A stretch of 64,000 bases of DNA from Antechinus flavipes (lineage: Eukaryota). Location: contig NC_067400.1 in the NCBI RefSeq assembly GCF_016432865.1, positions 624,588,001 to 624,652,000 of the forward strand. Reading direction: 5' to 3'. A program made the translations under genes and the position numbers. The notes under the pieces were generated by a model that was not told the origin of the DNA, made no database searches, and worked only from the letters and a program-made list of their open reading frames with translations. Shown in pieces: positions 15,234-61,244 of this stretch; the stretch's first letter is position 1, and each line of letters starts with the position of its first letter.

Positions 15234-17729
15234 GAAATATTTATTTCTTTTGTTGATATGTAAAGAGCTGTGGACACTGTTCAGATCTGGATACCATGTT
15301 TTAGGGAGGACATCGAGACCTCGTGACGATAGAGCTGGGGATGTTTAGCCAGGAGAACGGAGGATCTTGAGGGCCCACAGGAGGACTTGTGAAATCGGAA
15401 AATGGCTTGTTTGTCTGATCCCAGAAGCCAGTTCTAGAAGCCATAAGTACGAGTCGTAAAGGGCTCGCTTGCAGCCTCCTCACTATGGGAGATGCCTCTG
15501 GAGGGAGCCGCTTCCCCATCACTGGAGCTCTAAAGGACCACTTGGTGAATAGGAGATGGCCACCGACGCCTGGCTTCCAGGTTTGAAATCCCGGCTTCTG
15601 TGATTGTCAGGTTGAATAAAAGCAAGAAGATGGAGCTGGACATGGCATTGGCCCCCAGTGCTTGTGGGGTCCAAGAAAAGCTTTCCTTTAGTTTATAGAA
15701 ATATGGCAGGCCATTGGATTAACAGTCCAGTGAGAGGATGAATTACCAGCTGGTGATCTATCTGAGCCAGCAATCAATAAACACTGCTTAAACACCTACT
15801 GCATACCAGGCACTCTGCGAAGTGCTGGGAATTTCATAACGGGGCTAAAAAAAGGTTCCTGCCCTCAAGAAGCTTCCAATCTAATGGGTAACCTGATTGC
15901 TGCAGCAATATTAGAGCACCATTCTTGGGGTGGGTAGGACCCCAATCTGGGGAGTTCTCATGGTAAAATCTTCTTTCACCTTCAGGGCAAGCATTTGGTA
16001 GGAATTTTTTACTCCTTCTCCGAGAAATGAGCCATTAAGATAATCTTCCCCCCTGATTCTGTAATTAAGGTTCACCCAGGACGTAACCTCCAAGGTTAGA
16101 AAGAGCAGTTTTCAGGATTGCTAGTCTCTGATTTGGGTTTAGAAAACAACGTGTCCATCTTGGAGTCACCGTTCCATCCTCAGAACCAAAAAAGCACAGG
16201 ATTAATATCCCTGTGACCTAAAATTCAGGCTTTAATTAATGCAGAGAAGAGTCCTTCTTGGGCAGATCTTAGCAAGGGGAGCTTGCTAACAGAATATTGT
16301 TTCAGAACTGAGAGTTAAAAGACAGACCAATAAGCTACTTTTGAGGTTTCACCATCAAGGGCACAAGTTTGTCATTTTTACATCTACTTAAAGGCTCAGA
16401 GACTCCTGCTAGTCTTACAGAGGGGAGGAGAAGAGCAGAGCAGATCCTGGATCTCTCCCTTTCAAAGTTCCCTGGAGCAACAGTTCTTCCTCAGTCACCA
16501 ACAAGGGGGCCATTTTATCAAAACAAAGTAAAAGGCCAACAGAGCTAGTTCTGTGGGGACTCAGTTTCCACTATATACATTAAATCTATATCCCCAAATT
16601 GCCTATACACCTAAAGTAGTTACATATGATGTGATTTTGAAGAAAAAAATTATGTACTCAGCAGCCAAGCCTGACAGAAATCGTTTGTTGACTGGGGATC
16701 ATTCTCAATTCAAGCATTTTTCTACTTAGAGAAATGTCCAAATTGAAAAAAGTCCCTTCATGATCTTGGGCATCTTTCTCACAATTCATTCTGATGTCAC
16801 CCTTTATAGGATTCACGAACAAGAAATATTTCACAGTCAAGACTGAGGAAAAGGTCCAAAATTTAGGTAACAATTCAGTTAAGAACTGGTATAATTAAAC
16901 AGAACAAAAGTCACAACTTCTTTCTCCTGCATCCTAGAGAAACATTTTCCTGAAACGATTCAGTCCTTTGAATAATATCTCAAGATTTCTTCTTCCCATT
17001 TGGTCCAAAGTGAAGAAAAGAGATATTTCCTATTAACTGAAATAAAGAAGTTTCTTTTTATTTTTAAATGGATCATTATCATCATCCCTTCAGGGCATGG
17101 GGAAAGTGGGTTTCTCACTTTCTAGATTTACCAATCAAGGCCTCCCTAGGCTAGTTTCATTACCGAACTAATTATTTCAGGGAAAAGTCCTTCCTGGGAT
17201 GATTCTTCCCAAGGAAAGCAGAACACTGTTTCAGAATTGATAGTTAAAGAAAGATCAATAAGATCTTTCTTTGAAATTGGCCCCAAGGTTTTAAATTATA
17301 ATTTTTTTTTTGACTGAGAAGCTCTTTTCTTTAAAAAAATTTCCCCAGTTACATGTAAAAACATTTTTGTTATACGTGTACATTCATAGTTTTAGGTTTC
17401 GCTATGAATCATGTTGAGAGAGAAAACTCAGAACAAAAGGGAAAAACCACAAGAGAAAGAAAAAAAAAAAAAAAACCAGAAGAAAAAGAAAAAAATTGGA
17501 CATAGCATGGGTTGATTTACATCAGTCTCCATGGTTCTCTCTCTGGATGTAGGTGGTGATTTCCATCCAACGTTTGCCTTGGGTCACTGAAGCGCTGAGA
17601 GGAACCAAGTCTGTTGTAGCTGACCATCCCACAATCTTGCTATTGCTGTGTATGACATCTTTCCGGTTCTACTTGTTTCACTCAGCATCACAAACTACAG
17701 TCAGTTAAAAATATGTTCTTCATATTTCT

Positions 17730-29282: not shown

Positions 29283-32200
29283 CCTCGGGATTATCACTAT
29301 GTTTCCCCTCGAAGCTTGGACCCTATCGATACTAGAGCTATATCTTACTAGAAATGTTTGTCTCTAAATCTTTCAGAATGGAAGCACATTTAGCTATTGA
29401 GCAACCATTAGTGAGAGGCAGCCGCTATTCTCATGCAGTGTGAAATCAGAGCATTTTAATGCAGTTTTTTTTTTTTTTAAAGAAATGTAGAGTTTTTGTT
29501 ACGTCCATGCAAAAAGCCAATTCTGTTTAAGCTAATGGGGGACGTGTTTGCCCCGTGTGTCTGGGGCACTAGCGTGGCTCCTGATAAAGAACTTATTTAT
29601 TATATTCAGACCAAGCCATAGGCAATAGATTTGCGGATGCAAAAGGCTCTGAGCCCTTGGCACGTGCCCCGGCACCCGGCGACTTTTCACTGGTTGATCC
29701 CATAGAGCCCTCATTCACCTCGGTGCCAGCGCCAGCCGCAGGACGGGCCAGCTTCGGGGATCCGACTCGGGGGCACCTCCCGGCCCGCCCTCCAACTGCT
29801 CGTCGTTCCAGCAGGAAGGACTTTCAGAAGATAGTCACCCCTGCCCCAAGGACCTTGGGCCCCATCTGGCCGGAGGGAAACTGTTGGGGTGAATGGACCC
29901 CAGCCAAGCCCCTCCCAGGTGCGAGTGGGCCCGCAGTGGGTGCTTGCTGACCCTGTGCTAGTCTCTGCTCCCGTGCCCCGCAGGGAGCGGGCACCCTGTG
30001 CCAGCTCGGGCGGCAGTTCATCTCTCTCACTCCAGCCCCACAGAGCCTGTGTTTTACTCTCAGTTCTGGACGCCACTTGGGTCCCGGGATTTGGTCCCTA
30101 AAATTTCAGTCTGCTAGACCCCCAACCCTGTTTTCAAAAGATTCAGCCCATTAAGCGAGTGGGGAAATGGTGAGGTCCGGAATGGTGGCCGCGTTGGGCA
30201 GCGAGAAACGGAAGAAGTGAGAAACTCCACCCCTGAGGCGGGCAGAAGGCCCTGGCAGAGGTCAGTCAAGCTCCGTGGTCCCCCCTTTGGGGAGATGTCC
30301 AGTCAAACCCCTGAGGGCCCCCCCAGCCTGAGCAGCCTCCCCTTGCCATGCTCGGACAGAAACCCCAGTCATGTCCCTGAGGGCCATCCCATGGCTGCTG
30401 CAGCCGCGGCGGGCTGGGGGTCCTTCCCCTTCCCCCACGCCATGGGGTCTCTCCCCTGACGCCCCACCCCGCTTCTCCTCCTTTTGGGGTCCGAGTCCCT
30501 TCCAGGGCTGAGCCTGCCGGCTGAGGGCTCACCCCCACCTCAGGGGCTGCTGCCTCCCTCCTGGGTGATGAGGAGCTTGGTTTTCACATGCTCTCCCACT
30601 CACATTTACCCATTTTTCCTATTTCTGTGTTTTACCTGATTTCACACATTACCGTGTCTGCTGTGTCCCGCCCTTTTGTCTGGGACTCTTCCCCAGACAA
30701 ATCTACCCCTAGCGAAGACCCCAACTTTGGGTAGCGGCCCTCGTCGGGCGTCTCCCTCGGCCGTCACGGGGCACAGGGAGAGACAAAGGGCCGGCCTCCG
30801 CTCTCGGGGAGCTCCCGGGAGAAGGCAGCGCCTTGCGGCAGAGCGCCCCAGCCCGAGCCCAATCTGCCCTCCGACACTTGTGCCCTCTGGGCTGGGGAGG
30901 AAATGGCCGACCATTCCAGGCCCTTCCCGGGCCGCGGAGCCGGCGGCAAAGAAACATGTCTGAACAAGCTAAATGGGGGAGATGGGGGGGCATCCCCACC
31001 GCGGGGGCCAGAGCGGAGGCCGGCGGTCAGAGTCTCCGGAAGGAAGGGGTGAGGAGGGAGGCTCGGAAGGGTGACAGGCGGAGGGCCTCGTGTTTAACCC
31101 TGTGCCATGGAATCTGTGCCCACGGGGGATCCTATGGACCCCTGCTCAGGTGATATTTGTAAATGAATAAAATGAAATACATAAGCTTACAAAGGAAACC
31201 AATTCTATTGAGACGCAGTTATAAAAATATGAAAAAACGCAAATCCTTGGAGCCGGGGTTTAGGAGCTCTGTCCTAGACGGCCTCCGGCCTGGAGAGGAA
31301 GCCTACAAGGACGGGGGTCTGCGATCCGAGTCGTCCGGGCCACCTTCAGCTGCCGCTGCTCTGACCCCATGCAATTGGGCGCTCGCAGTATGCCACGCGG
31401 TGCCCTGGGCCACAAAGGCAGAGAACGAGGGGCCAGGGCTGCTGCCCCTGGGACCCGGGGGTGGTCGGCGGCCCCAGGAGGGCAGATGCGGGAGACCTCT
31501 TCTCCCTCCCCCCTCCCCGAAGGAGACCAGTTCCAGCCAAGAAGGGAAGCAGGAGGTCGGGGCAGTGAATCCCGTAGCAAGTAACAAAGACCCCCCCCAA
31601 ACAAAACCCCGAGAGCATCCCCAGGAGCCGCCATAGAGGTAGGATCTCTCCCCTGGGAGACAACTCAGTGGGACCATTAGAGTCCTAGCTCTCTCCCGAG
31701 GGGAGATCTCCGGAAAGCTCTTCCGCAGGAGGCTGGGGACAGCGCCGCTGGAAACCCGAAGCGACTGCAATGCCCCCAGGTCCGAAGACTCGAACTCTCC
31801 TCTCCGGCCCACGCTCATTTTGGCCGCCTCTGATGCAAGCTTCCACATCGTCCCCGGCCATGGCGGGAATCCCAGGCTGATGGATTTGGGGGCTGGGATC
31901 ACAGAAAATAGAAGATAGTTTCTGCCCTTTAAAAATTATTTTTACACACATCTGCCATCTGCCCTTCCTCAACTGAACAACCACCAGAAGAGGAAGGAGG
32001 GACCTAGGCCAGCAAAACAAATCCCTCTGCTGACGGTGCCTGAAGCCGTTCCCGCCGTCCCTTCTCTGGCACTGGGGGGCGGGCCGTTTCCTCTCCAGTC
32101 CTTTGCCTCGTTTCTCAGCGCGTTGGGCACAGTTTCAGAAGCTCTCAGGACGGTTTTTCTGCATAACCTCCTTGTGCCAGCGGCTGCCCCGGTCCTGCTC

Positions 32201-33699
32201 ACTCGGCACCAGACAGATCCCTGCCAGCCGTTTCCTGACTTGCCCGACGGGTGACTCGCAGAGCCCACGCGGACCTAATCTCTTTCCCTGCCAGGAAGAA
32301 GGCCAAATGGCCACTATCGGATGCCCCCGTTTCCCGGCGGCTGCTGTTGGTGCCGCGTGATGGAGGGCGGAACTCGGCGTCGGTGTCCCGCCTATTCCCT
32401 GAGCATCTTTAACCCCCCTTTGAGACCTCATTAGCCAACCTGCTCTGGGAGCCTCCCTCTGAGTTCCTGCTGCATTCCCTGAGAAACTCCAAGGCTTGTT
32501 TCCCATAGAGAAGATCTTTGCCGAGTCCTTGTCAGGACTGAGCCCGCTCTGAGGGTTCCCTTTCTCTCTAATGGAATCTTTCCCCTAACTCCGGTGAGCC
32601 GCCCCACGCCTCCGCGGGTCTCACCGCAGGACCGCCCAGCAGGGGGTGCCCTCCTCCGAGAAGGGCTCCGCCAGCAAAGCGGGATGAAAAGTAGCTCGGA
32701 AGAAAAGCGAGAGGCGCTTAGTCCGGCCGTCCACGTGGACTATGAGTCCGGCCTGGGGACCATTTGAGCTCCTGCGGGTCTGAAAAGCCGCAGCCCGACA
32801 CACCTTAACTCAGCTCTAATGCGGTGATGTCATCTGGGTCCCTTCCAGAACGAGGGACACCAGCACCCACCTCAGGCCGGGGAGGGGAGAGTGGACTGAG
32901 ACCTGGGCGGGGCTTAGCTGCGGGGGCTACATTCGGAGAGGAGGGCACCTCGCCTGCTCCCGCGCTCCTAACAGACGCTGGTTTGGAGGTCTTACTCCTG
33001 TTCGCCTGGGAGCTCCGTGGGGAGCGAGAGGTGGGCTTCACCTAGGATGACACAGTCCCTACACGAAGAACTCTCTAGAACCCGGGCCCAAATCAGGAAG
33101 CTCTCCCCCCAGAATTAAGAATAGACTAGAAATTCCTCATGGAACAGACTTTCCCCCAAAAAATTCAGAATAGGCTTTCCCAGAATTTATTGATGGAGCA
33201 GTTCAAGGACTCTTGCCAGGCAAGGACCCACGAATGGACTCTTCCAGTCTCCTAGAACCTATGGACGGAACAGTGCAATGACTCATGTGGTGGGGGAGGC
33301 ACATCCTCTCCTTTACTCCAGAATGGATTCTCCCAGCCTCCTTCAATCTTGAAGTGGATTGGGCAGAGCCAGGACTCTTGGTGGGGAGGGGGAATCTCTC
33401 CCTACATTTCGGAATGGACTCTTCCAGCCTTAAGACCCATCCTCCCCTAGATTTCAGAATGGACTCTCCCAGTCCATCTTCCTAGTAGCTCCGTAGAAGT
33501 TCACGGATTCACGGAGGAAACACTTCCCCTGAATTCAGAACGTCCATTATTTCCTGAGCCCAGGGCGGCCGGGTTCACGGTCAATAACGGGGAACATCGT
33601 CAGACTCCTCACCAATGCCCTCCTCCATCCTCCCCCTACCCCAGGTCCTTTTCTGCAGCAGGGAATTGCAGGCCTTATTCCACCTATCCCAGCTCGCTC

Positions 33700-34900
33700 C
33701 GCCTGTTGGCCAACAGCCAACGCCTCCCGGTTTCACCAATTCCCATTGGTGTGTGTTGGAGGGGAGGCTTGCGTCACGATTAGTCTGGACTTTTATTCCC
33801 CTCCCCCAACTCCCATTTAGTCTATACGATTCGCCGACCATGGCGGAAGTTTATCAGGATCCTCCAATCAGAATAAGAGTCGGAGAGCCAGGGCGGGATT
33901 TTTGCGCGGAGATGAACTCCACCCGTCTCCCAGGCAACGCCCCTCCCCTCTTCTTCCCCCTACGTCCCTGCTTCCCCGACCTAGTCCTCCGGGCGGAAAC
34001 AGAGAACGAGTTTGGCCAATGGGAGGCAGGTGGGGCGGAGGCGGCTCTACGGGACGCGAGCTTGGACCAATAGGAAGAGGGCAAAGGCGGGGCGATCGCG
34101 GTAATGACCAGTAGGCGATGAGAGACGCGGGGGCGGGGGCCCAATGAGGGGGCGTCGACGCGGCCCGCCCGCCTGCCTGCCGCGGTCCCTCCCTTTCTCC
34201 CTCAGCGCTGAGGAGAGGAGCGTCGGGTGGTCCCGGCCCCGGCCCCGGCTCCGGCTCCGCCCCCGCCCTCAGCACTCCCGACTCGGCCCCGGAGTCCGGG
34301 AGCCCCCGCCGCCATCATGCCGGCAGTGTCCAAGGGTGACGGCATGCGGGGCCTGGCCGTGTTCATCTCGGACATCCGCAACTGTGAGTGGGGCAGGGGC
34401 GGGGGAGGGGAGGGCAGGGGCGGGGCAGGGGGGCGGGGCAGGGGCGAGGCCACGCTGGTCACTCCCGAAGCTGCTGAGGCTCCCTAGTGCCTTCTGCTCC
34501 TGTCTGCCCCTCTCCCCGGCCCTCATCGGATTAGGATTCCTCCCCCAAATCGGGGCCACCCCTCAGACAGGGAAGTGAGGACTTGGCTCCTCCCTCCGGG
34601 GGCCGAGGCGGGATCGGAACCCAGAGCCTCTGCCGGGGTGGGGTGGGAGCGGGGAGGAGGCATCCTCAGGGAGCTGCCAGTCCGGGAGTCAGGGGCTTGG
34701 GGGGATGGCCCGGCCGGGCAGGGCCTTGAAGGCCGCACCTAACCCCGGGCTGGGGCCGCCAGGGTCAGAAGGGAGCAGGGGGTTGGAGGGGGCGGGGGCG
34801 GGGCCGAGTGCCCGTTCGGACGGTGGAGCTTCAGCCTTGTGCTGGGCGCTGTGGGCGCCCCCACTGTCCCTGAGGCAACTCAGGGACTTCTAGTAAGGCC
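33700..34900 (+). promoter_or_regulatory. AP2A1 CpG-island promoter
   Basis: Dense CpG; several CCAAT boxes (~33863, ~34015, ~34066, ~34141) and GGGCGG boxes upstream of ATG 34317. Confidence 0.8.
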
Positions 34901-42149: not shown

Positions 42150-44594
42150 CTAGAGGAAGGGGGTGAGAGCGTGCAGGGTCCGAGTGGCCAGGCCCCGCAA
42201 GGCATGCGTTGGGCTCTGGGGGCTCACCAGCAGCAGGAGGCGGCGGGGCCCCGTCTGGATCGCCACCAGCCTGAGCCCAGCCCCGGGGTCCTCCCGGCCC
42301 TCCGGCCCCTTGGCAGCCGCCCCGGACACCATGTAGCAGGCCCGGGGAATCCCTGGGGGGCACCCCTGCTCTTCGGCCTTTTCCTCTGATGACCCCGCCT
42401 CTGAGGAGAAAAGGGAAACACGAGCTAGGGACTTGGGGCTCCCCACTCCGCGCCCCTTGGGAAGCCTTGAGCCCTGCTGACCTGGGGGGAAGTGGGTGGC
42501 AGTGACCAGAGCATAGAAGGAGCGGAGGAGGCGCCGGCGGGTCCTGGGGGAAGGACCTGGGGAGGAGAAAAAGAGATGCCCTTGAAGCTTCCCCCCTGTC
42601 CCGCTCCCTGGACCCACGTCCCATGCTGTGCCGGACCCCCCACCCTGGCGCACCTTCCTCTCCGCCAAGATCCACCGTGAAGAAGGCACGTTTTTGCTCC
42701 AGGTGCAGGAAAAGGAGCCTGGGGGGGAGATCCTGTTATGTTCCTGGGTGCACCCTGAAGCCTTCCGGGTCCCGGCTCCCCTCACTTACCCTAGAATGTC
42801 GGGGTGCAGGGAGAAGCCTGCCGGGATCGCCCTGGGTGCGAGGGCCAGGCAGGCCCTCAGCGGCTCCAGCATGGGCTGCCACCAGCGTTCCAGGACCTGG
42901 GATGGATGGGGGGGAGGGCTTGAGGCAGGGGTCAGGGCCTGCATCCCGCTCTGCCCAGGGGCCCCTGGCTGACTGGGGGCTCGGCTCACCTGAGGCTCCA
43001 GCTGGCTGAGAGACGGCTGAGGCCCACACAGCACACACAGCTCCAGGCCGGGCAGCAGCATCAGCGTCAGGAGGCGGTGGGGCACCTGGCAGAGGGGCAG
43101 CTTAGGGGCAGTGGGCACGGAAACACCCCCCGCCCTCCCCGGGCCCACCCTGCCCCTCACTCACCGTGGGACTCCCGTGGGGCAGGTAGACGGGGTAGTC
43201 GCGGGCAGCCTGGGCCGGCAGGGTGCCCACCAGCCAGGGCAGCAGCACCGCCTCCGGAGACCCGAGGCGCCACCAGCCCTCCGTGCCCACCACCACCCGG
43301 CCACCCACCACCAGGCTGGCAAAGACGCTGCCCACCTCCTCAGCAAAGCCCGCCAGGGCCTCCTGAGGGAAGAAAGGCTGGCCTCATTGGGGCTGTCTGC
43401 TAGGGGCTGCGGGGGGCTCAGTGAGGAGGGGGAAGGGGCAACATTTACTTTGGGCCTACTGGGGGTCCTGCTTGGGGCTCAGCGGGGGCCCTTCTGCTGG
43501 GGGCTCAGTTGGGGCTCTTCTGACTCAGTTGTTGAGTGGAGGAGTCTGCTCTGGGCTCAGTAGGGGTCTTGCTTGGGTTGAGTTGGGGTCTGTCTGCTCT
43601 GGCTGCCCCCTTTTATGCCCCCGCAAACCCCCCCTCTCCTTGCTCCTTGGGCAGCAGCTTGGGTGACCTGCAGCAGCGGCCCATCCTCCGGGGCGATGCA
43701 GTCCACGCACTGGGTCAGGTCCCCGGCCAGCTCCGCGTCCCCCAGGAGGCTGTCGATGAGGCCATAGGTGGCCTGGGGAGAAAGACCAGGTCGGGACTCG
43801 GGTGCCGGCCCCGCCCCTGAGGCCCCGCCCGCGACTCCGCCCCCCGCTTACTCTCAGCTCCTTCTTCAGTCTCTCCACGTTGCGGATTCTGGTCAACTCT
43901 TCGAGGCCGACCAGCAGGACCTAGAGACAGACATTGTGGGGACCTGGACGGGGTGGGGAGTGGGAGGGCAGGGGTCCGCACCCGGCCGGCAGCCTCTCAC
44001 CATGGCCCCGAACACCAGCTCCAGCAGCCGCTCCAGCCTGAGCTCCGAGCATCCCGGCTCCGAGGACAGCACGATGAGGGTGACGCTGTAAGGGGGACGG
44101 CCGGGCGTCAGGGGCGTGCTCATCACAAACCGGGACACTGAGGCACGCAGGGCGGGCCCTGGGCGCGGCGCCCCCATCCCCCCGGCTCACCTGTCGTGGA
44201 AAGTCTTCCACACCACGGCCGTGTCCTCGGTGCGCGCGGAGCGCAGCGTCACGTCCAGGTTCTGTCCGAACATGTGCACGCCATTGAGGGAGCCGATAAC
44301 GGAGAAGGGCAGCTGGAATGGGGTTCCAGGTCAGGACGGCAGCCAGGGACCGGCGAGAACTACAGCTCCCGGCGAGCCCTGCGCCAGAGCCCAGCGGCCC
44401 AGGTCCCGAACGCGCGGGCGCTTTCGGGAGCGGTAGTTCTCTCCCTCTCCCCCACCCCTTCCTGCTTCCGTCAGCGGCTTCACCTGCTGCCGGGAGGGGG
44501 CGCCCCCGCGGCTGCTCCTGCAGAATAGGGGGACTCCGCTGGAGGAGGCGAGGCAGAGTAAGTGCACGGCCCCCGAAGTGCCGTCTTCTGCCAT
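42150..44594 (-). CDS. FUZ: Fuzzy planar cell polarity protein, 11 coding exons, 427 aa
   Basis: MAEDGTSGAVHLLCLASSSGVPLFCRSSRGG...HALTPFL*. Exons: 44594-44484, 44312-44191, 44085-44001, 43920-43852, 43772-43668, 43362-43165, 43085-42990, 42896-42790, 42718-42654, 42556-42482, 42400-42150. Sum 1284 nt. Confidence 0.97.
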
Positions 44595-46355: not shown

Positions 46356-47080
46356 TTGTTTCCACCCCCTCCTCTAGTCACATTTCCCCCAGCAGATTGC
46401 CTTCAGTACCAACCCTTCTCTAATGTTCAGTCTCTATCTACTGATTTCTTCTCCAACACCTAGGAATACTCCAAAGTTTCCCCCATAAACTATTTAAATT
46501 AATAAGCACCTACTATGTGGCAGGTACTGTGCTGAGTGCCGGGAATCCAAAAATAAAAGGCAAAAGACAATTCTACACTTAAGGAGTTTGGGGGGCAGGG
46601 GATGGGGGGGACAATGCAAATAATGTGTTCAAAGCAAGCTACATCCTGGCTAAATGGGAAGGGACCAACAGAGGGAAGGCCCTGAACTTCAGAGGAGCTG
46701 GGGAGGGTGTCCAGGAAAAGGAGAGATGTTGTTGGGAGCCAGGGAGCTCAGCGGTCAGAGCAGAGGAAGGAGGAACGGGGCCAGTCGGAGAGGACCCCGG
46801 GCCGGGGATGGAACAGCCAGGAGGCTGGGGCACTTTATTGAAGAGGGTGTGTTGGGCGGTGAAAGGTAAGAAGCTGGGTAAGGGGGGGAGAGGCTGGGCT
46901 ACCAAGGGTCTACGAAGAGAGACAACAGGAAGTCGCCGGTGTCAGTTGGGGGGGTGAGCTCTGGGGGAGCCACTTTTCTGGCTGAATGGAGAACGGATTG
47001 GCAAGGGAGACACTGGGGGCAGCTGTGACCCCTCAGCAGCTGCTGCCCTAGAGAAGGGGTGAGGTGAAGGGGAGCTGGAC

Positions 47081-47812
47081 AGGGGCAGTGATGGGAGCTG
47101 GGGAAGGGGCAGGGGCAGTGATGGGAGCTGGGGAGGGGCAGGGGCAGAGTGATGGGAGCTGGGGAAGGGGCAGGGGCAGTGATGGGAGCTGGGGAAGGGG
47201 CAGGGGCAGTGATGGGAGCTGGGGAAGGGGCAGGGGCAGAGTGATGGGACGAGCCTGGGGCAGAGTGATGGGAGCTGGGGAAGGGGCAGGGGCAGTGATG
47301 GGAGCTGGGGAGGGGCAGGGGCAGTGATGGGAGCTGGGGAAGGGGCAGGGGCAGTGATGGGAGCTGGGGAAGGGGCAGGGGCAGTGATGGGAGCTGGGGA
47401 AGGGGCAGGGGCAGAGTGATGGGATGGGCCTGGGGCAGAGTGATGGGAGCTGGGGTAGGGGCAGGGGCAGAGTGATGGGAGCTGGGGAGGGGCAGGGGCA
47501 GTGATGGGAGCTGGGGAAGGGGCAGGGGCAGTGATGGGAACTGGGGAAGGGGCAGGGGCAGAGTGATGGGATGGGCCTGGGGCAGAGTGATGGGAGCTGG
47601 GGAAGGGGCAGGGGCAGAGTGATGGGAGCTGGGGAGGGGCAGGGGCAGTGATGGGAACTGGGGAAGGGGCAGGGGCAGTGATGGGAGCTGGGGAAGGGGC
47701 AGGGGCAGTGATGGGAGCTGGGGAAGGGGCAGGGGCAGTGATGGGAGCTGGGGAAGGGGCAGGGGCAGTGATGGGAGCTGGGGAAGGGGCAGGGGCAGTG
47801 ATGGGAGCTGGG
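47081..47812 (+). repeat. 30-bp G-rich minisatellite (~24 copies) between FUZ and MED25
   Basis: Unit AGGGGCAGTGATGGGAGCTGGGGAAGGGGC, with +GA, -A and ~22-bp GGGCCTGGGGC variants. Confidence 0.95.
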
Positions 47813-48171
47813 GCCGAGTGATCTGAGAAGCTGCCAAGAGAGAAATCCACAAGCCTTGGCCAGAGCCTGGGAGTGGGAGCCAGAGAGCCCGGGACTTGTG
47901 CGCCCTCTACAGTAATTAGCAAGTGGTACAGGTGGAACGGTAGAATGACTTGAGGAACAAAGGTTCGAGGTTCCCTTCCCGTTTATTTATTCGCGATTTC
48001 CCACCAGTCTGGACCCCACCTGCTCGGCTTTGGCCCTGGGCCCTCAAACGGGGAGACAGAGGTTTAGCATTGGAAACAATTCATCAAATCGGACCAAGCA
48101 ATTACAATGACGCCATTGACTAGGCCACAATTAAATAATCTGATTTCTAATTGGAGGAAAGACCCCTCCAT

Positions 48172-50599: not shown

Positions 50600-56187
<5,588 letters not shown>

Positions 56188-56203
56188 CGTTGCCCCCCGC
56201 CCC

Positions 56204-56328
56204 AATAAAGCTTCCTTCCCCCGGCCTCGGGCCGGGCGCACTCGGACCGCGTGTCGGCCTGCTCTCTGGGAGACGTCCCGCGGGGGGAGGGGCAGCAGTC
56301 GGGAGGTGCCGTGAAAATAGCTTTTATT
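56204..56328. terminator. Convergent polyadenylation signals of MED25 (+, 56204-56209) and PNKP (-, 56328-56323)
   Basis: AATAAA 16 nt after the MED25 stop; TTTATT 23 nt beyond the PNKP stop. Confidence 0.85.
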
Positions 56329-56351
56329 GGGGAGGGGGCGGGGGCGGGGCC

Positions 56352-59160
56352 TCAGCCCTCGGAGAACTGGCGGTAGAGGGCCTCGTGCTGGGGGTCGGAG
56401 AAGCGGGGGCGGAAGGGGATCTCCAGAATCTGCGAGAAGCCCTCGGCCAGGGAGGGCGCCACGAACTGCTTCCTGCAGGGGAGGTTTGGGGTCAGGGGGC
56501 GCCGAGGCTTCCCCGCGGCCCCCTCGGCCCCCACTCACCTGTAGCTGAACATGACCATGTCCGACACTGCCGGGTGCGGGGACCCCGTCATCTCTCGGAA
56601 CTGGGGGGAGAAGTCACAGGGTCACGAGGTCAGGTCGGGGGGGAGGCCGGGGTCCCGCCCGCAGGTCCCCGCCCCTCCTCACCCGGTTGTTGTGTCGGGC
56701 CAGGTCCAGCGAAGCCGAGAAGTGGAAGCATCTGCAGGGGACCCCGGCCTCCTTGGCACACGAGATATACCTGGCAGGACGGTGGGGGGTGAGGGCTCCT
56801 GCGCCCCCCCTTCTGCCCCCCAACTCCTTACCCCCCCTCGCTACCTGGCCCGGCTGGCGGGGTCGGGGTTGGTGTTGTCCACCACGGCGCGGCCCCCGGC
56901 CTTGAGGGCCTCGGTGCACACGGCCACGCATTTCTGCCAAGAGCCCAGCGTGTCCTAGGGAAGCAGGGAGAGGCCTGAGCCGGGGCCACGCCCACTTGGC
57001 GGCTGGCGCGCGCCCGGCCCCCCACGTACCCGGTTTGCGTAGACGTAGCCTGCCGCCACCAGGTGTTCCTGGAGAAACGTGGACTTCCCGGCTGTGGGGG
57101 GGATGGGCGGAGAAGTCAGGGGGGCGCGTCTGGGGAAGGGGGCGGGGGGGACAGGAGTCAAAGGCCGCCTCACCTGCGGGGAAACCGACGGCGACGACGA
57201 TCTCGGGGCCGGGGCCCACGAGAGGCCCAGCGGGGGGCAGGCACAGCGGCCCCGTGGGGCTCAGACTTCTCTGCGGGAAATCGGGGGGAGGGATGAGGCC
57301 GGGCCCCCAAGAGGCGGGCCATCTCCCACCCAGAGCCCCCCCAAACCTCACCGGGTCAAAGTCTGGGAGGGTGAAGCGGGACGGGGTCCAGTCCAAGAAA
57401 AACTCTTCCGGAGTCAAGAACCGCAGGCCGAGGTTCAGAGCAAACTGAGGGGGACAGGGAGGTCAGTGCGCAGGCCCCCCCAGCCGGAGGCGGGGGCAGG
57501 GGCAGCAAGCCTTACCAGCCGGTCCCCACAAGAGAAGTCCTTCTTGCGGCCCGGAGCCCAGTTGGCCGGCCGGCCGGCGGCGTCTGAAAAGGAAGCGGCG
57601 TCAGTGCCCGGCCCTGCCTCGCGCCCGGCGTGCCCCCCAGGGCTCCCGACCTTACCTCCCACGTAGAAGCTGTCAGCCACGGAGACGGGGACCCCCTCGT
57701 TGGCCTGAGAGAGAGAGAGCAGGAAGAGGCTGGGGGCGGTGGCAAGGGGCCAGGACCCCCGTGATGGGGCCGGCCCGCTCCACCCTCCGGCCCCACAGGC
57801 AGCCCCGGGCACCTGCTGGCACATGTGCTCCCACATGCCCGTCGCCGGCTTCCGGTAAACGCCCGAGCCCGTGGCCACCAGCACCTGGGGGGGAAGAGAG
57901 GCGCGTGGGCTGGTGTGGAGGCCCCGGCCGCCCCCGGCCCCTCTGCCTGACACCCACCTGGAAAGGGGCCCCCAGGGCCTCCAGGACGGTCTCCATCTTG
58001 CTCTGGAACACCTGGGGCTGGAGCCGCCCTCGCCCGATGCCCATTTGGTTGGTGAAGACGACAAGCTGCAGAGGAAGGCGAGCGGGGGTCGTCGCCAGGG
58101 CCCCGGCCCGGCCCCCAGGCCCCCCCACGCCTCCCACCGGGTACCTTGTAACCATCAGCCTCCAGCTCCTGAAGCCGCTTTGGGATCCCCGGGAACAGGA
58201 TCCTGGTGGAAAGAAAAGGGAGGAAATGCCCCGGGGAGGCTCCCCCCTGCCCGGGCCCCCCAGACCCAGCTGTCCTACCTCCAGTCCTCGGGGCTGGTGG
58301 GGAAGACCTTGCCCGAGCGGGTGGTGATGAGGGTCCCGTCCAGATCGAAGGCGGCCACCTGGAGGGCACGGGCACCTCGGGTCAGACGTGCTGGGGCGCG
58401 GACAGAGGGTCCCCGAGACCCGTGGGGCAGGGGCTCACCTTCTCTCGGGCCCGGACCCCTGGGGCCGTGAACACTAGCAAGGGTCCGAGCTTCTGCCAGC
58501 CTTCGGGGCCTCGGGGCCGCTTCTTGCGGGGCTCTGATGGGGTTTCCTGGGGCGGGCTGGGCTGGGGGGGCTCCGAGGTCCTGAGCAGGGTCAGCGGGTG
58601 CTGACCATTCACCAGCAGCAGCGTCTCCCCGACAGCCAGCTGGGCCTGGGAGCCGGGGCTCAGCCTGGTGCTCCCCGCAGTGGAGGGGTTCGTGCCCCGC
58701 TGGGTGCAGAGGGGGTCCCTTAAAGTCAGGCCCGCCCTCCACTGATGGGAGGGGCTCCCGATGGTCAGGCCCCACCCCCATTTTGCTGGGGGGGGCTGAG
58801 GATTCCGAAGGCAGGACCCGCCCCCCACTGCTGCCAACCTGCCAGGGGGAGACCCAGTGATCCGTCCCTCTACCCTCCGACGCCGTTACCTGCGTCACCA
58901 TCACGACTTCAGACGTGGGGTCCACGCACACTTCCACTGTGGTGGGGAGGGGAAGATAAGGTCCCGCCCGCGTGGTGCCTGGGCCACGCCCCACCCCCAT
59001 CCCCGCCCTTCCCACCTTGGTTGCGCGAGCACTTCCGATCGGTGACACGAGTCAGTGGACCCCGACCCAACACGAGACTGCGGCCCGCGGGGGGCAAAGG
59101 GATGGGGGGCGGCCCTCCAGGCGGGCTGTGCAGCCACAGGGTGGGCTCCGGCGTAGCCAT
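56352..59160 (-). CDS. PNKP: Polynucleotide kinase 3'-phosphatase (FHA, HAD phosphatase, kinase), 16 coding exons, 506 aa
   Basis: FHA motif [21 protein letters not shown] motif FDLDGTLI, P-loop GFPAAGKST, C-terminus LYRQFSEG*. Exons: 59160-59016, 58936-58890, 58699-58439, 58358-58279, 58202-58145, 58065-57958, 57884-57813, 57704-57656, 57583-57516, 57444-57352, 57270-57174, 57091-57030, 56954-56845, 56770-56683, 56600-56539, 56472-56352. Sum 1521 nt. Confidence 0.97.

Positions 59161-60067: not shown

Positions 60068-61244
<1,177 letters not shown>

What the first reader, a model, noticed from the sequence alone, without database searches (positions are those of the whole stretch)
56188..56351. 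PTOV1 is missing: MED25 and PNKP stop codons are only 164 bp apart
Seen: gap-free sequence containing both poly(A) signals, with no room for a gene and no ACID-like remnant. Established (recalled): the human order is FUZ-MED25-PTOV1-PNKP-AKT1S1-TBC1D17, and PTOV1 consists of two tandem domains homologous to the MED25 ACID domain. Inference: this may be the ancestral pre-duplication state, with PTOV1 arising in eutherians by local duplication of MED25 ACID exons. Clean loss or relocation in this lineage is the alternative.
Basis: partly seen in the sequence, partly recalled or inferred. Interest (0 to 1): 0.7.

Follow-up and report, generated by a model that had tools for sequence, protein, structure and literature searches.

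The report
Marsupial MED25–PNKP junction lacks PTOV1
In this marsupial the genes MED25 and PNKP end tail to tail only 164 bases apart, with no trace of the cancer-linked gene PTOV1, and comparison with other animals indicates that this is the original layout and that PTOV1 arose later, in the ancestors of placental mammals, as a partial copy of MED25.

Summary
MED25 (+) stops at 56185-56187 and PNKP (-) stops at 56352-56354. The 164-bp spacer has no N and carries one AATAAA for each gene. Rat PTOV1 matches nothing in the 64 kb except the single set of MED25 ACID exons.

- Koala, bilby and opossum have the same junction (149, 137 and 167 bp), with both poly(A) signals conserved.
- A turtle also has MED25 directly against PNKP (516 bp).
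- Rat has MED25-PTOV1-PNKP-AKT1S1, and aardvark has PTOV1 next to PNKP.
- In a search of 5.8 billion proteins, every hit scoring above the MED25 level was a named eutherian PTOV1, a predicted eutherian MED25-PTOV1 read-through model, or one of five nameless entries that fall inside crown-eutherian PTOV1.
- Both PTOV1 blocks keep MED25's intron positions and phases.
- In a domain tree, PTOV1 A and B sit inside vertebrate MED25.
- The fly "PTOV1 homolog" sits inside dipteran MED25. An AU test rejects fly-mammal orthology (p 5e-6), against what the PTOV1 literature states.

Not done:
- No genome-wide tBLASTn of marsupial or monotreme assemblies.
- No tree with a joined marsupial ACID domain.

Gene birth by local partial duplication is a known process. 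This is a new dated case and a correction to published orthology.

The parts
51290..56187 (+). MED25 coding region, from the ATG to the stop
   Evidence: ATG at 51290. The N-terminal exon hits Pfam Med25_VWA and the ACID exons hit PF11232. The C-terminus is identical to koala, bilby and opossum MED25 over the 31 residues compared.
53805..55113 (+). The five MED25 exons that encode the ACID/PTOV domain. Exon A ends at 53888. Exon B is 53971-54056. Exon C is 54195-54252 (58 nt, located by coordinates only). Exon D is 54347-54454. Exon E is 54898-55113. The next exon starts at 55208 with MGG.
   Evidence: Splice contexts and phases (0, 2, 0, 0). This is the only place in the window that rat PTOV1 matches.
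56185..56187 (+). MED25 stop codon (TGA)
56204..56209 (+). MED25 poly(A) signal AATAAA, 17 nt after the stop
   Evidence: Conserved within CCAATAAAGC in koala, bilby and opossum.
56188..56351 (.). 164-bp stop-to-stop spacer between the convergent genes. PTOV1 is absent here.
   Evidence: Its outer parts align with rat on either side of about 16 kb that holds PTOV1.
56323..56328 (-). PNKP poly(A) signal AATAAA (TTTATT on the + strand)
   Evidence: Conserved within CTTTTATTG in all four marsupials, with a similar motif in turtle.
56352..59160 (-). PNKP coding region, from the stop at 56352-56354 to the ATG at 59160
   Evidence: The last exon matches the last exon of the PNKP-domain gene in the turtle locus.
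60068..61244 (-). AKT1S1 (PRAS40) coding region
   Evidence: The best protein hits are marsupial AKT1S1.
43100..44594 (-). FUZ, with its ATG at 44594 (the 3' limit is approximate)
   Evidence: FUZ is also the upstream neighbour of MED25 in bird and turtle.

Best explanation
The 164-bp MED25|PNKP junction is the ancestral amniote arrangement. Two convergent genes have their poly(A) signals facing each other across a short spacer. PTOV1 is not missing from marsupials. It had not yet been made when their lineage split off.

PTOV1 arose on the eutherian stem, after the split from marsupials and before the placental radiation. A genomic segment carrying the five MED25 exons for the ACID domain, plus the start of the next exon, was copied in tandem into the space between the two poly(A) signals. 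It ended up as two blocks (A and B) behind a new first exon.

Shown here: the junction in four marsupial orders and one turtle; PTOV1 beside PNKP in rat and aardvark, with MED25 upstream of it in rat; identical intron positions and phases; PTOV1 nested within vertebrate MED25.

Inferred: the exact branch (eutherian stem) and the mechanism (tandem segmental duplication rather than retroposition).

A corollary is that the fly 'PTOV1 homolog' and a mayfly two-domain protein are separate duplications of insect MED25, not orthologues of PTOV1.
For: Junction. Stop-to-stop spacers are 164 bp (window), 149 bp (koala L005), 137 bp (bilby L006) and 167 bp (opossum L007), with both poly(A) signals conserved. 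The turtle Platysternon L002 has FUZ, MED25 and a PNKP-domain gene, with a 516-bp spacer that holds no N.

Eutherian layout. Rat L004 has MED25, PTOV1, PNKP and AKT1S1 in that order. Aardvark L008 has PTOV1 next to PNKP. The same flanking anchors are about 130 bp apart here and about 16 kb apart in rat.

No second copy. tBLASTn of rat PTOV1 hits only the one set of ACID exons in the window, koala, bilby, opossum, bird, turtle and frog loci.

Protein search with PTOV1. Every hit at 316 bits or more is a named eutherian PTOV1 (Afrotheria and Xenarthra included), a predicted eutherian MED25-PTOV1 read-through model, or one of five nameless entries that fall inside crown-eutherian PTOV1. MED25 of all tetrapods follows at about 282 bits. 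The same database does hold marsupial and platypus annotations.

Exon structure. Rat PTOV1 has 12 coding exons. Blocks A and B each have phases 0, 2, 0, 0 and exon sizes 83/74, 58/58 and 108/105 nt. MED25 here has 86, 58 and 108 nt with the same phases. PTOV1 ends RG|MGG-stop where MED25 continues RG|MGG....

Tree. PTOV1-A (100/99) and PTOV1-B (100/99) group together (93/85) inside vertebrate MED25 (98/96). In the smaller tree they nest with eutherian MED25 (SH-aLRT 81-88).

Characters. S and L at alignment columns 2 and 5 are shared by eutherian MED25 and PTOV1-A, against T and V in all four marsupials and V, M or I in every outgroup at column 5. At column 41, marsupial MED25 and both PTOV1 blocks have Q, against H in eutherian MED25. 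The tail reads LEQ in therian MED25 and PTOV1-B, against IEQ in most sauropsids sampled and coelacanth.

Fly and mayfly. The Drosophila PTOV1 homolog domains sit beside Drosophila MED25 inside Diptera (100/99), and each still does so when the other is left out. The AU test rejects a fly-plus-eutherian PTOV1 clade (delta lnL 80, p 5e-6). The Cloeon two-domain protein groups with a Cloeon MED25-like protein (100/100).
Against: - No whole-genome tBLASTn of any marsupial, monotreme or sauropsid assembly was possible. Absence elsewhere in those genomes rests on annotated proteins in the database, which lists only the best 120 hits and only proteins of 231-735 aa.
- The monotreme locus could not be fetched.
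- Outgroup synteny rests on one turtle. The bird and frog loci showed no PNKP within 10 kb.
- The ACID domain is so conserved that the tree leaves PTOV1's position among jawed-vertebrate MED25 weakly resolved.
- The marsupial-versus-eutherian timing rests on two or three residues. These could also arise by convergence or by gene conversion between neighbouring paralogues.
- The published review states that PTOV1 is conserved in fish and insects (PMC5355357).
Confidence: 0.8

Rival explanations
1. PTOV1 is older (therian or mammalian) and was deleted cleanly in the marsupial stem, leaving MED25 and PNKP abutting.
For: The tree does not resolve whether PTOV1 split before or after the marsupial-eutherian divergence. 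Q at column 41 is shared by PTOV1 and marsupial MED25. The monotreme state was not seen.
Against: A turtle outgroup has the same MED25|PNKP adjacency. No platypus PTOV1 appears among the hits, although platypus proteins are in the database. A deletion would have had to remove at least 8 kb and still leave both poly(A) signals and a spacer of about 150 bp intact in all four marsupial orders. PTOV1-A shares S and L with eutherian MED25 and not with marsupial MED25.
Confidence: 0.1
2. Marsupials have a PTOV1 gene that was moved elsewhere in the genome.
For: Only 64 kb of this genome and about 22 kb of three other marsupial genomes were read. No genome-wide search was possible.
Against: No marsupial protein scored above the single-domain MED25 level in the PTOV1 search. 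RefSeq annotations of at least eight marsupial species are in that database.
Confidence: 0.05
3. The junction is an assembly artefact, such as a collapse or a missing segment.
For: The read-level check failed, so this assembly itself was not verified with reads.
Against: Four independent assemblies of four species show the same junction, with alignable spacers and no N. Contigs from public runs of several related organisms hold 41-94% of the sampled words of 54800-57800.
Confidence: 0.01

Closest known systems
Eutherian MED25-PTOV1-PNKP-AKT1S1 locus (seen here in Rattus rattus L004 and aardvark L008; the human locus as described in PMC5355357)
   Same: The flanking genes, their orientations and both poly(A)-signal regions are the same. 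The MED25 ACID exons have the same boundaries and phases.
   Different: The marsupial locus has about 130 bp where rat has about 16 kb that includes the 12-exon PTOV1 gene.
Drosophila 'protein PTOV1 homolog' (P0081, P0155)
   Same: It has two tandem PF11232 domains and no VWA domain, as PTOV1 does.
   Different: Both domains nest beside Drosophila MED25 inside Diptera. Orthology with eutherian PTOV1 is rejected. The review calls it the orthologue.
Cloeon dipterum two-domain PTOV protein (P0096, P0156)
   Same: It has two tandem PF11232 domains.
   Different: It groups with a Cloeon MED25-like protein and its nearest other relatives are insect MED25s. It may be a lineage-specific duplicate, or two adjacent genes merged by the gene caller.
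Turtle (Platysternon megacephalum) FUZ-MED25-PNKP locus, L002
   Same: MED25 and PNKP are convergent with nothing between them, and both have poly(A) signals close to their stops.
   Different: The spacer is 516 bp, against 137-167 bp in marsupials.

Membership tests
PTOV1 | One gene encoding two tandem PTOV/ACID domains (PF11232) without the MED25 VWA domain | tested here: not met
   The window, koala, bilby and opossum loci each contain only one set of ACID exons, and these lie inside MED25. Among all proteins fetched, two-domain proteins are eutherian PTOV1 and MED25-PTOV1 read-through models, a few nameless entries that fall inside crown-eutherian PTOV1, Drosophila or Cloeon.
PTOV1 | Position between MED25 and PNKP on the MED25 strand | tested here: not met
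   The 164-bp spacer holds only two poly(A) signals. The full position is filled in rat, and aardvark shows PTOV1 beside PNKP.
MED25 | N-terminal VWA domain plus one ACID/PTOV domain plus the conserved C-terminus | tested here: met
   Pfam Med25_VWA and Med25 hits on exons scanned separately. The C-terminal 31 residues are identical in four marsupials. The exons were not joined.
PNKP | FHA, phosphatase (PNK3P) and kinase domains, with the conserved C-terminal ...QFSEG | tested here: inconclusive
   The C-terminal exon matches the last exon of the turtle's PNKP-domain gene. The syntenic gene in koala, bilby and opossum carries FHA_2, PNK3P and AAA_33. The last exon alone gave no Pfam hit, and the other window exons were not scanned.
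Lineage-specific gene born by tandem segmental (partial-gene) duplication | The copy keeps the parent's intron positions and phases and lies beside the parent | tested here: met
   Phases 0, 2, 0, 0 and near-identical exon sizes in MED25 and both PTOV1 blocks. The copied boundary RG|MGG is kept. PTOV1 lies directly downstream of MED25.
Lineage-specific gene born by tandem segmental (partial-gene) duplication | Absent from outgroups at the syntenic site and elsewhere | tested here: inconclusive
   The syntenic site is empty in four marsupials and one turtle. 'Elsewhere' was tested only through annotated proteins, not by a genome-wide search.

The most novel reading that the evidence does not exclude
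PTOV1 is a gene of placental mammals only. It was made by copying five MED25 exons into the gap of about 130 bp between the MED25 and PNKP poly(A) signals. Mediator-free proteins with two ACID domains were invented independently at least three times: in eutherians, in drosophilid flies and in a mayfly. The fly 'PTOV1 homolog' would then be a convergent analogue and not an orthologue.
Probability: 0.7. Interest if true: 0.6.

Novelty: new member of a known kind. Interest (0 to 1): 0.5.

Why it matters
PTOV1 is studied as an oncogenic adaptor. The literature calls it 'conserved' in fish and insects, and its Notch interaction was tested by expressing the human protein in flies (PMC5355357, PMC8468328).

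If PTOV1 is a placental-only derivative of MED25, three things follow.
- Marsupials are natural PTOV1-null mammals in which MED25 ACID works without its paralogue.
- The fly gene cannot be assumed to share PTOV1's function by descent.
- Repeated birth of double-ACID proteins that do not bind Mediator suggests a recurrent selective use, plausibly as competitors of MED25 for activators. That last point is inference.

It also gives a cleanly dated example of gene birth, with both flanks of the insertion site still recognisable.

Tried and rejected
There is therefore no read-level or RNA 3'-end evidence. They were masked in local BLAST, and exon C was located by coordinates only.
- The look-up of encoding contigs found nothing on record for the Dermochelys, Varanus and Ascaphus MED25 isoforms or for platypus AKT1S1.
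- The bird (L001) and frog (L003) loci gave no PNKP within 10 kb, so they say nothing about adjacency.
- Papers: no paper in the library links PTOV1 with 'eutherian' or 'placental mammals'. The only hit for 'marsupial' is an unrelated review on milk and mTORC1, and the only hit for 'gene loss' is the CIBLIN paper discussed in the full report.
- The Rfam scan of the window found nothing.
- I considered and rejected the published view that PTOV1 is bilaterian. PMC4568025 lists it from Ensembl orthology groups that allow lineage-specific duplicates, and the tree and AU test contradict fly orthology.
Marsupial exons were compared one by one. For that reason no tree includes a marsupial ACID domain.
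- Human entries in the hit lists were not used.

Full report
**Observation**

Reading 55600-57000 shows the MED25 frame ending ...ILMDLI with TGA at 56185-56187. On the other strand the PNKP frame ends ...QFSEG with its stop at 56352-56354. A script confirmed both ends and both AATAAA signals, at 56204-56209 (+) and 56323-56328 (-). The spacer is 164 bp, and the window contains no N.

Open frames on both strands give the gene order:
- AP2A1 (+, ATG at 34317)
- FUZ (-, ATG at 44594)
- MED25 (+, 51290-56187)
- PNKP (-, 59160 down to 56352)
- AKT1S1 (-, 61244 down to 60068)
- the first TBC1D17 exon (+, 63314)

. Pfam recognises Med25_VWA and the PTOV/ACID domain PF11232 on separately scanned MED25 exons.

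**Which genome**

Earlier notes of this scan call the genome the yellow-footed antechinus. I treated this as a lead only. In agreement with it, an open frame covering the first AKT1S1 exon finds koala, monito del monte, opossum and bilby AKT1S1 as its best named hits. These match at 80-86% over about 65% of the query for the first three, while eutherian proteins mostly match only the conserved first third.

**No PTOV1 remnant**

Rat PTOV1 (P0176) was run by tBLASTn against the window at E<=1, with places 54197-54257 masked. It hits only the MED25 ACID exons at 53805-55047. ACID exon peptides searched against the window find nothing else above noise.

**Is the junction real and general?**

Independent assemblies answer the question instead. 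Starting from marsupial AKT1S1 proteins I fetched three loci:
- koala (L005)
- bilby (L006)
- opossum (L007)

All three show TBC1D17, AKT1S1, PNKP and MED25 in that order, with MED25 and PNKP tail to tail. The stop-to-stop spacers are 149, 137 and 167 bp. The four spacers align. Both poly(A) signals, with a few flanking bases, are conserved, while the middle is free to vary. Rat PTOV1 again hits only one set of ACID exons in each locus. The state is therefore shared by Dasyuromorphia, Diprotodontia, Peramelemorphia and Didelphimorphia.

**Outgroups and ingroup**

- In the turtle Platysternon (L002), FUZ, MED25 and a gene with FHA and PNK3P domains follow one another. MED25 and PNKP are convergent, 516 bp apart, with no N between them.
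- Bird and frog loci showed only MED25 within reach.
- In Rattus rattus (L004) the order is MED25, PTOV1, PNKP, AKT1S1.
- In aardvark (L008) PTOV1 lies next to PNKP.
- The marsupial sequence just after the MED25 stop and just before the PNKP stop aligns to rat positions 543-650 and 16865-16895. About 130 bp here therefore corresponds to about 16 kb in rat.

**Distribution of PTOV1 proteins**

A full HMMER scan with the last ACID exon found two kinds of named protein with two PTOV domains: eutherian PTOV1 and insect proteins (fly 'PTOV1 homolog' and a mayfly protein).

A word-indexed search with a 420-aa PTOV1 gave these results:
- Every hit at 316 bits or more is a named eutherian PTOV1 (Afrotheria and Xenarthra included), a predicted eutherian MED25-PTOV1 read-through model, or a nameless entry.
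- MED25 of mammals, birds, reptiles and frogs follows at about 282 bits.
- The five nameless high-scoring hits fall inside crown-eutherian PTOV1 in a tree.
- A domain count over all fetched proteins found no other two-domain protein.

The database does contain RefSeq proteins of at least eight marsupials and of platypus, so their PTOV1 would have been visible if annotated. This is evidence from annotation, not from a genome-wide search.

**Exon structure**

I mapped rat PTOV1 exactly onto its locus, which gives 12 coding exons.
- Block A is exons 2-6. Block B is exons 7-11. Exon 12 encodes only MGG and the stop.
- Both blocks have intron phases 0, 2, 0, 0.
- Their exon sizes are 83/74, 58/58 and 108/105 nt.
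- MED25 in the window has 86, 58 and 108 nt with the same phases. Its exon E ends ...RG and the next exon begins MGG.

The copied unit was therefore genomic DNA with introns. It ran from the first ACID exon into the exon after the domain.

**Phylogeny**

An IQ-TREE analysis of 59 domains gave these results:
- PTOV1-A (100/99) and PTOV1-B (100/99) group together (93/85) inside vertebrate MED25 (98/96).
- Both domains of the Drosophila 'PTOV1 homolog' sit beside Drosophila MED25 within Diptera (98/92 and 100/99).
- The mayfly protein groups with a mayfly MED25-like protein (100/100).

Each fly domain keeps its place when the other is removed. Forcing fly and eutherian PTOV1 into one clade costs 80 log-likelihood units (AU p 5e-6). 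A smaller tree nests PTOV1 with eutherian MED25 at moderate support.

**Timing within mammals**

- All four marsupials are identical in exons B, D and E.
- At alignment columns 2 and 5, eutherian MED25 and PTOV1-A share S and L. Marsupials have T and V, and at column 5 every outgroup has V, M or I.
- At column 41, marsupial MED25 and both PTOV1 blocks have Q, while eutherian MED25 has H.
- In the tail, therian MED25 and PTOV1-B have LEQ, where most sauropsids sampled and coelacanth have IEQ.

The simplest order of events is as follows: L in the mammalian lineage; S and L on the eutherian stem; the duplication; then Q to H in MED25. All of these precede the placental radiation. These are few characters, and convergence or gene conversion could mimic them.

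**Literature**

The main review calls PTOV1 conserved in mammals, fish and insects, and calls the fly gene its orthologue (PMC5355357). PMC4568025 lists PTOV1 among bilaterian-conserved genes, but from Ensembl orthology groups that allow lineage-specific duplicates. No paper in the library links PTOV1 with eutherians, placental mammals or marsupials in this sense.

**Verdict**

Loss in marsupials stands at about 0.1, relocation at about 0.05 and an assembly artefact at about 0.01.

The feature in the window is itself ordinary: a compact convergent gene pair. The interest lies in what it dates. PTOV1 appears to be a placental invention, and the fly 'orthologue' appears to be a convergent duplicate.

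Noticed in passing
window 54479-54868: A 31-bp minisatellite (12.6 copies) fills the MED25 intron between ACID exons D and E. The same intron in the warbler locus (L001, about 30458-32306) holds a tandem array whose units each look like the start of exon E.
   Followed up: no
window 47080-47813: A G-rich minisatellite with a 30-bp unit, about 25 copies and higher-order periods of 147 and 177 bp lies in the 6.7-kb FUZ-MED25 intergenic region.
   Followed up: no
P0198 (Panthera leo), P0202 (Suncus etruscus): Predicted 'MED25 isoforms' of about 723 aa carry the MED25 ACID domain followed by a PTOV1-B-type domain. These are MED25-PTOV1 read-through models, which shows how closely the two eutherian genes are coupled.
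   Followed up: partly
window 54898-55113 and the same exon in L005, L006, L007: All four marsupials share two MED25 ACID substitutions, HFHH for HFPH and IPNDQ for IPYDQ. The first was seen in no other vertebrate sampled. The second also occurs in fishes, cyclostomes and one bird.
   Followed up: partly
L004 1-2077 (Rattus rattus): The longest annotated rat MED25 product (801 aa) ends about 1.4 kb beyond the canonical ...MDLI stop, which maps to L004 543-650. It is therefore an extended 3' isoform reaching towards PTOV1.
   Followed up: no
P0001 (Coryphaenoides rupestris, 428 aa): A fish 'hypothetical protein' has a partial VWA domain and two partial PTOV stretches. It looks like a mis-assembled or mis-called MED25, not a fish PTOV1.
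   Followed up: partly
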